Source: Ranitomeya imitator (taxonomy: Eukaryota). From it: 64,000 bases of DNA. A program made the position numbers and the translations under genes. This document shows, one piece after another, positions 31,015 to 32,879 of this stretch (the first letter of the stretch is position 1; each line of letters begins with the position of its first letter). The stretch covers positions 62,558,001-62,622,000 of the forward strand of contig NC_091290.1 of assembly GCF_032444005.1 (NCBI RefSeq). The letters run 5' to 3'. Under the pieces are notes generated by a model that was not told the origin of the DNA, searched no databases, and worked only from the letters and a program-made list of their open reading frames with translations.

Positions 31015-31055
31015 CTGTGCTTGACAAAGGTCTTATGACCGAAACGTTGACGCAG
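31015..31055 (+). ncRNA. Minimal type I hammerhead ribozyme variant (PLE-1)
   Basis: Stem I CTGTGC/G(A)CGCAG; core TTGACAA + A; stem II GGTC-TTAT-GACC; GAAA; palindromic AACGTT stem III; predicted cut GUU^ after 31048. Folded by eye. Confidence 0.8.
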
Positions 31056-32879
31056 AAGGCAGAATAAAAAAAAAAAAAAAGCCGCAGAAGGCAGAATAAA
31101 TGTGAGCTGCTTTTTTCACTTCCTGGTGTGGCGCTGTCCTCTTTTGCATTTTTATTTGGATCTATTTTCTGGGATGGACCCCCTGGTGAGGACGTGCGCC
31201 ATGATGTCCTGAGAGACGGTATTGGTATAGGGTGCGGCCAGACAAATTTCTTTGGATTTGGACTTTCTAGTTAGTCATCAAGTACTTGGATGCATAATGA
31301 TAATGATGATAATGGCCTTAGTTACAGAGTGAAGTGTTTTTATATGCTTGATTTGATTATAAGTACTTTGCAAAGCAAGTTTAGTGTTCTTCGTCTGTTT
31401 TGCTCCCTGTTATAAGCCCACTCCTTTTCCTTATTTTTCAAATGCATTTTTTTCTAGAATGGAGAGATGGAAGGGAAAATAAAAGAGACAACCCCAGAAA
31501 TACATATAGAATAATTTATTCTATACATTTACATTTTTGCCTTAAGGATTATAATAAGGGACAAAAGACCACAATGAGGAAGGGGAGATTGGTTAGCATT
31601 TTACTAATTCAGCCTTTTATTTCATCATACAAAGTCAGATGTTCCAATTAACTTGCTTAACTTGTGAAACAAATAACATTTTTCTTTATGCTGTATATTA
31701 AAAAACATTCCTTAAATGGAATCTGTCACCACATTTAACCTATCTGAACTATTAATATGGGCATACAGGTTATAGACTGCTGAACAGGGTGATACTGGTA
31801 TATGCACTACTGCTAGTACACACATGAAATGACATTTTCCAGACAATGGCCAGGATGTTTCCAGGAAGATGACGATGCCTCCTCACAATTGAGGAAAATT
31901 GTAATGTTAAAACTTTTGCTCGTCACGTCATATAATTATAAATTGCAAAATACAGTATGGGGGAAATCTCATGTAGAAAAACATATGAAAAAGCCAAAGC
32001 CCATTTAGAATTTAGAGTAATGTGCAGATCTACATATTTGATGGACAATATGCAGACACGACAATTAATGAATACATAAACTACACTGTTAGTACTAAAT
32101 AATGACACAAGCTCAATTTACATTATTTTCGTAAAAAATGTACAAGTCATTCACCAGCGAGAATGTGAACTGCATGGGTACACCACTCCATGTGCCCGAC
32201 CAGGCCTCATATGATGTATAGATAATACAAAATCTATCTGAACGCTAATTAAAACTTTTCTAGGAATGACGAAGCAGATACTTCCTTACTACTCATTGCA
32301 GGAAAACCTATAAAGAGGCCTATAGTATTAAATTTGAGTTTTACGCATATATAGTCAAATGGATTACTAGTTAGCTAACTCAAAATGATGTTGCGTTATG
32401 CAGGACCTTTGGACCTTTGTCATGTCAGAGCCTGGGCTCACTATACAAGTCGGTGATTAAACCCCAAATTTTATGTCAGCGTATCTTCAAAAAGCTAAGA
32501 AATAACCAATGATCATATATTCTTGTCTGCGTAAAGTCTAGTGTGAACATTTGTTAGCTCAAGATAGCTCATCAGATAGTTTGCAATCTTCACTCCTGCT
32601 GATCAATTAGCAGGGACAATGCTGTAGTTATTCATTATTGGTATGTATTTCATGCAGATTTGAAATTTTAATTTAAAGCCAATTATGTAACAACTAGATG
32701 GTAGCCGATTTTAACGCATTGGGTATTCTAGAATATGTATGTAGTTTATTTATGAAGATTTTAGAATAATACATTGAATACACAGGATTCGGCCGGACGC
32801 GAAGAATTAGTGAAGAGTGGTTCAAATCCCGTGCCAATTTGCGGCCGGACTGTGCTTGTCGCTGATTGTTTGCGGCCAG

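What the first reader, a model, noticed from the sequence alone, without database searches (positions are those of the whole stretch)
31049..31257. Element tail restarts exactly at the hammerhead cut after an A15 tract: fossil of an RNA end-to-start junction
Seen: GTT^GACGCAGAAGGCAGAATAAA (31049-31068), an A-run to 31080, then GCCGCAGAAGGCAGAATAAA (31081-31100; 19/20 match) continuing 177 nt to the TSD. The restart is the first nucleotide 3' of the predicted cut. Inference: the template had a ribozyme-made 5' end and an A-tailed 3' end, and RT jumped between them (circularised RNA or a second molecule). This would be direct evidence for how pLTRs are generated. Caveat: the As begin within AATAAA rather than 10-30 nt downstream, so they may be non-templated or slippage products rather than a canonical poly(A).
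Basis: partly seen in the sequence, partly recalled or inferred. Interest (0 to 1): 0.8.

Follow-up and report, generated by a model that had tools for sequence, protein, structure and literature searches.

The report
Template-switch scar at Penelope hammerhead cut
One young frog Penelope-like retrotransposon copy has an extra 32 letters (20 re-copied letters plus an A-run) exactly where its hammerhead ribozyme should cut, which most likely records the reverse transcriptase running off a ribozyme-cut RNA end and hopping to a second RNA; it is a single case.

Summary
The window holds a 5'-truncated Penelope-like element (PLE) between 16-bp target duplications at 28467-28482 and 31258-31273. After the hammerhead (cut 31048^31049) come +1..+20, an A15 run, then +1..+177 again.

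This 32-nt extra is not family consensus. 67 other junctions in about 40 loci of this 5.96-Gb poison-frog genome read GTT^GCC without a break. The A-run, the near-tandem repeat and the +2 A variant are each unique to this copy.

The cut site is supported independently:
- The motif has the published features of PLE minimal hammerheads (U3-A8 core, extra base before stem II, palindromic AACGUU).
- The inverted arm of the same insertion stops 0-3 nt from +1.
- An older mini-insertion joins two arms head-to-head exactly at +1.
- Other mini-insertions end 19-34 nt upstream (mostly 26-33), about 30 nt after a TATA box, which suggests the transcription start.

My reading (about 0.6) is a template switch from a ribozyme-made 5' end to a second, uncut RNA. 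The origin of the A-run is unresolved, because it starts inside AAUAAA. A circular RNA is not supported, and this one scar does not show how pLTRs are generally made. Public contigs neither confirm nor refute the junction. The scan had already noted joints at hammerhead cuts in retrozymes of this genome.

The parts
28467..28482 (.). Left copy of the 16-bp target-site duplication TTGGACTTTCTAGTTA
   Evidence: Identical to 31258-31273.
28483..28554 (-). Short inverted arm: reverse complement of +72(74)..+1 after the hammerhead cut. It is unambiguous to +7. TGC (28549-28551) is shared with the other arm, and AGC (28552-28554) matches the other arm or +3..+1 with one change.
   Evidence: the repeat finder I1 gives 99% complementarity to 31081-31154. 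Junction read: a full run-off would end TGCGGC, and unit 2109-2114 reads TGCAGC.
28555..31048 (+). Long-arm body, equal to unit 2117-4612. It holds the C-terminal part of the RT, the GIY-YIG endonuclease (ORF ends 29789), the 3' UTR, a TATAAT box at 30988-30993 and the hammerhead up to its cut.
   Evidence: 99.1% identity to the genomic tandem unit. ORFs. Homologs carry RVT_1 and GIY-YIG.
31015..31055 (+). Minimal type I hammerhead: helix I CUGUGC / G(N)CGCAG, core UUGACAA plus an unpaired A, helix II GGUC-UUAU-GACC, then GAA and ACGUU^G. Predicted cut is 31048^31049.
   Evidence: The MFE fold gives helices I and II in hammerhead layout. The features match Cervera & de la Pena 2014. There is no Rfam hit.
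31049..31068 (+). First copy of +1..+20, continuous with the uncut hammerhead. It has a private A at +2, which is a bulged base of helix I.
   Evidence: The GAC variant is unique in the genome.
31069..31080 (+). 12 extra A (the whole A-run is 31066-31080, 15 A)
   Evidence: Absent from all other copies.
31081..31257 (+). Restart: +1..+177, ending at the long-type reverse-transcription start site next to the TSD
   Evidence: Unit 1-182 at 98.9% identity. Other loci end their long arm at +177..+187.
31258..31273 (.). Right copy of the target-site duplication

Best explanation
The 32 extra bases are a one-off template-switch scar left when this Penelope-like element copy was inserted. Shown: insertions of this family have two inverted arms, one starting about 72-81 nt and the other about 177-187 nt downstream of the hammerhead cut. 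This fits the published finding that PLE protein nicks both target strands and starts reverse transcription at two internal RNA sites. Inferred for this copy: the long-arm cDNA started at +177 on an RNA whose 5' end was the hammerhead cut (+1) and ran off it. It then continued on a second, uncut RNA, copying 12-15 A, then +20 back to +1, the uncut hammerhead, the 3' UTR and the ORF. The short-arm cDNA started at about +74, also ran off at or near +1, and annealed by microhomology to the long-arm cDNA at unit 2109-2114, which fixed the 5' truncation. The acceptor was most likely an A-tailed 3' end lying at +17..+20. A less likely variant is a short excursion on some poly(A), followed by re-landing on the A-rich AAUAAA at +15..+20.
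For: The 32-nt extra sits exactly between GTT and G+1 and is unique among the family junctions found in the genome. The hammerhead layout predicts that cut. In the same insertion the inverted arm ends 0-3 nt from +1, and its would-be terminal hexamer matches the joining site 5/6. The independent locus C2:303090450-481 has both arms ending at +1, joined by a GC overlap and flanked by a 15-16-bp TSD. In the fetched young two-armed loci, both arms cross the cut and their inner ends scatter over unit positions 362-3725, so an end within 4 nt of +1 is roughly a 1-in-1000 event per arm. The two-arm architecture with short and long outer ends is seen in almost all fetched young two-armed loci and in older copies. 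It matches Frangieh et al. 2024. The sequence left of the A-run passes through an uncut hammerhead, so it needs a different template from the one that ended at +1.
Against: This is a single case, and public contigs did not bridge the A-run. The A-run starts within AAUAAA, with no poly(A) signal 10-30 nt upstream, so a normal mRNA tail is not shown. The conserved CA and GU-rich block at about +36..+52 suggests the normal site would lie further downstream. Cleavage by this ribozyme was not tested. PLE minimal hammerheads cut poorly in vitro. Frangieh et al. found no RNA-seq reads ending at the cut and no need for cleavage in vitro. The short-arm end is ambiguous over +1..+4.
Confidence: 0.6

Rival explanations
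1. No cleavage took place. The reverse transcriptase stalled at the folded (dimeric) hammerhead just after copying +1, because the palindromic AACGUU helix III lies directly ahead. The cDNA end came loose and re-primed 20 nt back on the same or a partner RNA. The arm ends at +1 in this and the other locus would also be stall products.
For: The palindromic AACGUU and the predicted dimer pairing start right at -1. PLE hammerheads cut poorly in vitro, and unprocessed RNA was the main template in vitro.
Against: A 6-bp A/U-rich helix is a weak block. 67 junctions pass it without a trace. A stall does not explain 12 extra A. A head-to-head join with only a 2-nt overlap at +1 looks like two clean run-offs.
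Confidence: 0.12
2. A DNA-level event unrelated to the ribozyme. Either an aborted poly(A)-only retro-insertion made a 20-bp target duplication (+1..+20), or a 20-bp tandem duplication was followed by growth of the A-run. In both cases the start at the cut would be chance.
For: The layout of 20 nt, A12, then the same 20 nt has the form TSD-poly(A)-TSD. The two copies differ at one base, as expected after some time.
Against: The left boundary would fall on the cut by chance, about 1 in 2800 positions of the element. The priming nick would read GGC/AAC, not the T-rich site that an L1-type enzyme needs to pair with poly(A). AAA is too short a seed for slippage to A15. The other arm of the same insertion also breaks at the cut.
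Confidence: 0.08
3. The 32 nt were already present in the transcribed source copy, so they record an earlier event and were simply copied here.
For: Not every source copy need be in the assembly.
Against: No other copy in 5.96 Gb has the A-run, the repeat or the +2 A. This only moves the same question one generation back.
Confidence: 0.05
4. Assembly artefact at a repeat junction.
For: No independent read support could be obtained. Contigs of other runs show only the canonical joint.
Against: Homopolymer errors change run length and do not create a 20-nt duplicate. The flanks and TSDs are coherent, and the locus is otherwise 99% like the family.
Confidence: 0.05

Closest known systems
Penelope-like elements of the Penelope/Poseidon type, including the PAc in vitro system (Frangieh et al. 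2024, PMC11167929)
   Same: It has a single ORF with RT and C-terminal GIY-YIG, tandem units forming pLTRs, an inverted 5' arm, a TSD, two alternative outer ends (the 'tail') and a hammerhead in the pLTR.
   Different: Here the distance between the two outer ends is about 100 nt rather than 30-40 nt. This one copy carries an A-run plus a 20-nt re-copy at the cut, which none of the papers read here describes.
PLE minimal hammerheads (Cervera & de la Pena 2014, PMC4209133)
   Same: It shows the U3-A8 covariant core, an unpaired base between positions 9 and 10.1, a G10.1-C11.1 pair, no loop 3, and a palindromic 15.2-16.2 stretch that implies a dimer.
   Different: That paper proposed that ligated circular RNA serves as a more-than-unit template. 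This scar has an A-run and therefore does not fit a circle.
End-to-end template jumping by non-LTR retroelement reverse transcriptases (R2; my knowledge, and PMC8857657 for the enzyme class)
   Same: The cDNA reaches a 5' end and continues on another RNA without homology.
   Different: The known junctions carry a few non-templated bases. Here there are 12-15 A, and the acceptor end lies at an unexpected place inside AAUAAA. The enzyme is telomerase-related and has not been tested for jumping.
Non-LTR retrozymes of amphibians (hammerhead tandem repeats thought to be mobilised by PLEs)
   Same: Both carry a type I hammerhead. Earlier scan notes on this genome place insertion joints on the cut site (s1-294651, s1-271780), which I did not check.
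   Different: Retrozymes are non-coding and thought to pass through circular RNA. This element is an autonomous family with an open 799-codon reading frame in a tandem copy.

Membership tests
Penelope-like element (EN+) | [quoted passage not shown] | tested here: met
   The open 799-codon reading frame of a tandem copy gives RVT_1 at E 1.5e-5, below Pfam's cutoff. 977 homologs score E<=1e-10, many carrying PF00078 and some PF01541 GIY-YIG. A CxxC..CC linker and GLYYVGET are visible in the window ORF. No phylogeny of the RT clade was made.
Penelope-like element (EN+) | Partial tandems (pLTR), an inverted 5'-truncated arm, a TSD, and an optional tail at one end | tested here: met
   13 young loci and older ones were mapped on a 4612-bp unit. 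They show tandems, inverted arms, and one short end (+72..81) with one long end (+177..187).
PLE minimal hammerhead | Core boxes, extra base between 9 and 10.1, G10.1-C11.1, palindromic 15.2-16.2, short helix I | tested here: met
   Read directly from the sequence and by MFE fold against the criteria. Loop 2 varies among copies while the stem is kept.
Rfam hammerhead families | Match to a curated hammerhead covariance model | tested here: not met
   There is no hammerhead hit at the gathering score or at E<=10. This is expected for loop-less minimal motifs with a U3-A8 core.
Self-cleaving ribozyme | Cleavage between U17 and G1.1 | not testable with these tools
   The evidence is indirect only: three arm ends in two insertions, plus the window restart, fall at or within 3 nt of +1.
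Canonical mRNA poly(A) tail as acceptor | A-tail begins 10-30 nt downstream of AAUAAA/AUUAAA | tested here: not met
   The A-run begins within the hexamer at +15..+20, and no hexamer lies 10-30 nt upstream. The conserved CA and GU-rich block lie at about +36..+52.
Circular RNA / rolling-circle template | Seamless joint GUU-G at the ligated cut | tested here: not met
   This joint carries 32 extra nt including 12 A. The seamless joints of other copies cannot distinguish circles from read-through transcripts.
L1-type poly(A) insertion with TSD | T-rich bottom-strand nick site that pairs with poly(A) | tested here: not met
   The implied nick is GGC/AAC.

The most novel reading that the evidence does not exclude
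PLE reverse transcriptase may normally work on ribozyme-trimmed, about unit-length RNA. It would start internally near the 5' end, run off the hammerhead-made end, and hop to the 3' end of the same or a partner RNA. That would build the pLTR. The two RNAs of a dimeric particle would be cut together by the dimeric hammerhead. Seamless joints would hide this, and the A-run copy would be the rare case where the acceptor end was A-tailed rather than ribozyme-cut.
Probability: 0.2. Interest if true: 0.8.

Novelty: new member of a known kind. Interest (0 to 1): 0.55.

Why it matters
What the hammerhead does for Penelope-like elements, and how their tandem and inverted ends arise, are open questions. 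In vitro work found cleavage dispensable and saw no RNA ends at the cut. Here genomic insertions of a young frog family give natural, sequence-level signs that cut RNAs exist in vivo and are reverse-transcribed: the restart at +1, three arm ends at or within 3 nt of +1, and many other ends at a likely transcription start. They also indicate that the enzyme can continue on a second template. This yields concrete, testable predictions: 5'-OH RNA ends at +1, both arms of an insertion agreeing in where they end, and jumping in vitro. It does not settle the general mechanism.

Tried and rejected
- Rfam at gathering and at E<=10 gave no hammerhead. The motif had to be judged against the published minimal-hammerhead criteria instead.
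- Read laying on four runs returned only Logan contigs. None of those listed bridges the A-run, so the junction is neither confirmed nor refuted.
- A search for other A-run restarts, A-runs after +20, and near-tandem repeats of the post-cut sequence found only the window. One extra hit (L067) had no PLE homology.
- A looser tandem pattern hit an unrelated 25-26-bp satellite more than 10,000 times and was useless.
- A search for a source copy with A at +2 found none.
- Pfam on the window ORF pieces gave nothing.
- Non-templated tailing as the source of the A-run was considered and put low. It would need 12 T added to the cDNA, whereas polymerases of this kind prefer purines (my knowledge; the paper read did not settle it).
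- A transcription start or a splice acceptor at +1 was rejected. The TATA box is 61 nt upstream and there is no AG before +1.
- My first TSD coordinates (28459-28474) were wrong and were corrected to 28467-28482. The short arm reaches +72..74, not +80.

Full report
**What is there.** Window 28467-31273 is one insertion of a Penelope-like element (PLE) bounded by identical 16-bp target duplications, 28467-28482 and 31258-31273. Its ORF is 5'-truncated. It keeps the C-terminal part of the reverse transcriptase and a GIY-YIG endonuclease ending at 29789. The open 799-codon reading frame of a tandem copy gives a weak RVT_1 hit. It has 977 homologs at E<=1e-10, mostly from frogs, that carry RVT_1 and in part GIY-YIG domains. 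The best matches are from Ranitomeya imitator, and one hit's contig length equals that of this genome's contig C3. The genome is 5.96 Gb.

**The observation.** I took a real 4612-bp tandem unit from C3:368793944-368798555 as a yardstick, numbered from the base after GTT^. Against it, the window copy is:
- the reverse complement of +74..+1;
- then unit 2112-4612;
- then 32 extra nt;
- then +1..+182.

The extra is +1..+20 (with A instead of C at +2) plus 12 A. Other copies run GAAACGTT-GCCGCAG without a break.

Whole-genome pattern counts:
- 71 sites have GCCGCAGAAGGCAGAAT. 67 of these are preceded by T and lie in about 40 loci; 4 are not.
- Of those 4, one is the window, two are one palindromic locus, and one is a related family with the canonical GTC^G.
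- The A-run plus restart, an A-run after +20, the +2 A, and any near-tandem repeat of the post-cut 14-mer are each found only in the window.

So the feature is real in the assembly, far beyond chance, and not part of the consensus. Read support could not be obtained: only Logan contigs were served, and none of those listed bridges the A-run.

**Is 31048^31049 really a ribozyme cut?** Rfam finds no hammerhead. The motif at 31015-31055 nevertheless has every feature that Cervera & de la Pena list for PLE minimal hammerheads:
- a U3-A8 covariant core (UUGACAA);
- an unpaired base before stem II;
- a G10.1-C11.1 pair;
- GAA;
- a loop-less ACGU within the palindrome AACGUU, which implies a dimer.

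The MFE fold gives helix I (with +2 bulged) and helix II in exactly that layout. Loop 2 differs among subfamilies while the stem is kept. Cleavage itself was not tested.

**Independent signs that +1 is a template end.**
- All well-resolved insertions of the family have two inverted arms. One has its outer end at +72..81 and the other at +177..187. This fits Frangieh et al. 2024, where PLE protein nicks and extends both target strands and starts reverse transcription at two internal RNA sites.
- In the fetched young two-armed loci both arms cross the cut, and their inner ends scatter between unit positions 362 and 3725.
- In the window, the short arm does not cross. It is unambiguous to +7, shares TGC with the other arm, and the next three bases (AGC) match either the other arm or +3..+1 with one change. 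A full run-off end TGCGGC would have annealed to TGCAGC at unit 2109-2114, a 5/6 match.
- An older subfamily insertion at C2:303090450-481, with its own 15-16-bp TSD, consists of a short and a long arm joined head-to-head exactly at +1 with a 2-nt GC overlap.
- Nine other mini-insertions have inner ends 19-34 nt upstream of the cut, mostly 26-33. A TATAAT box at 30988-30993 lies 28-35 nt upstream of those ends. These ends look like run-offs at a transcription start placed at the 5' edge of the hammerhead.

Run-off products therefore fall into two classes, the likely cap site and +1. That is what a ribozyme trimming a short capped leader would produce.

**Mechanism proposed.** The long-arm cDNA (bottom strand) began at +177 and reached +1 of a cut RNA. 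It then continued on another template: 12-15 A, then +20..+1, then the uncut hammerhead and on into the ORF. The short-arm cDNA ran off at or near +1 and primed on the long-arm cDNA by microhomology, which set the truncation point. The architecture, the uniqueness and the positions are shown. The order of events, the cleavage and the jump are inferred.

Both arms of the window insertion, and both arms of the C2 locus, break at +1, while both arms of most mini-insertions end near the putative start. This agreement between the two arms of an insertion is compatible with two RNAs in one particle being cut together by a dimeric hammerhead. That point is speculation.

**The A-run.** It starts within AAUAAA (+15..+20), and no signal lies 10-30 nt upstream. 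Three features are conserved across three subfamilies: the hexamer (AAUAAA or AUUAAA), a CA at about +36, and UGGUGUGG at about +44. This looks like a poly(A) signal whose normal site would be near +37, and the bases +21..+37 are missing from the scar. The acceptor was therefore one of two things:
- an unusual A-tailed end at +17..+20;
- some poly(A) copied briefly, after which the enzyme re-landed on the A-rich hexamer.

Adding 12 non-templated T to the cDNA seems unlikely to me (my knowledge). A circular RNA would give a seamless joint and is not supported.

**Rivals.**
- A stall at the folded hammerhead without cleavage (0.12).
- A DNA-level poly(A) insertion or duplication that falls on the cut by chance (0.08). 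The implied nick GGC/AAC is not L1-like, and the other arm also breaks there.
- Inheritance from an unseen source copy (0.05).
- Assembly error (0.05).

**Comparison and novelty.** The element is an ordinary member of a known class, and its architecture and hammerhead type are published. What is new is a natural scar, with supporting cases, indicating that hammerhead-cut RNA is used as a template in vivo and that the enzyme can continue on a second RNA. It does not show how pLTRs are generally made. Seamless joints can equally come from read-through of existing tandems.

Earlier notes of this scan on the same genome report inversion joints on retrozyme cut sites (s1-294651, s1-271780) and a five-fold end re-copy in another PLE (s1-312547). 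I did not check those. They point the same way but are not independent evidence.

Noticed in passing
window 30988-30993; loci L033, L060-L063, L058, L031, L032, L042: A TATAAT box lies 28-35 nt upstream of the inner ends of nine mini-insertions, which end 19-34 nt (mostly 26-33) before the cut. This suggests transcription starts at the 5' edge of the hammerhead, so cleavage would remove a short capped leader.
   Followed up: partly
window 31095-31132 (+15..+52); same stretch in L015-L023 and L058: AAUAAA or AUUAAA at +15..+20, a CA near +36 and UGGUGUGG near +44 are conserved across three subfamilies. This resembles a complete poly(A) signal inside the pLTR, upstream of both reverse-transcription start sites.
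   Followed up: no
L056 (C2:303090450-303090481): An older-subfamily mini-insertion with a 15-16-bp TSD has its two arms meeting head-to-head exactly at the predicted cut with a GC overlap.
   Followed up: yes
G000 C1:7667264-7670168 and C1:13533184-13533706: A large 25-26-bp satellite (unit starting GCAGAAGGCAGCTGGACACAG) gave more than 10,000 pattern hits. It shares an 11-mer with the PLE post-cut sequence, probably by chance.
   Followed up: no
window 26009-27314 (+): ORF fragments carry a YADD reverse-transcriptase motif, pointing to a decayed non-LTR retrotransposon. The region has strong negative GC skew (-0.44 in 26001-28000).
   Followed up: no
window 32877-32995: A short tandem array of a 20-nt unit (CAGCCACATAGTATATAGCA-like) is present, with about 5-6 copies.
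   Followed up: no
window 28417-28435 and 31277-31295: The host flanks just outside the TSDs form a 19-nt inverted repeat at 84% identity. It may be chance, or the target may lie in a small palindromic element.
   Followed up: no
I did not examine it.
   Followed up: no
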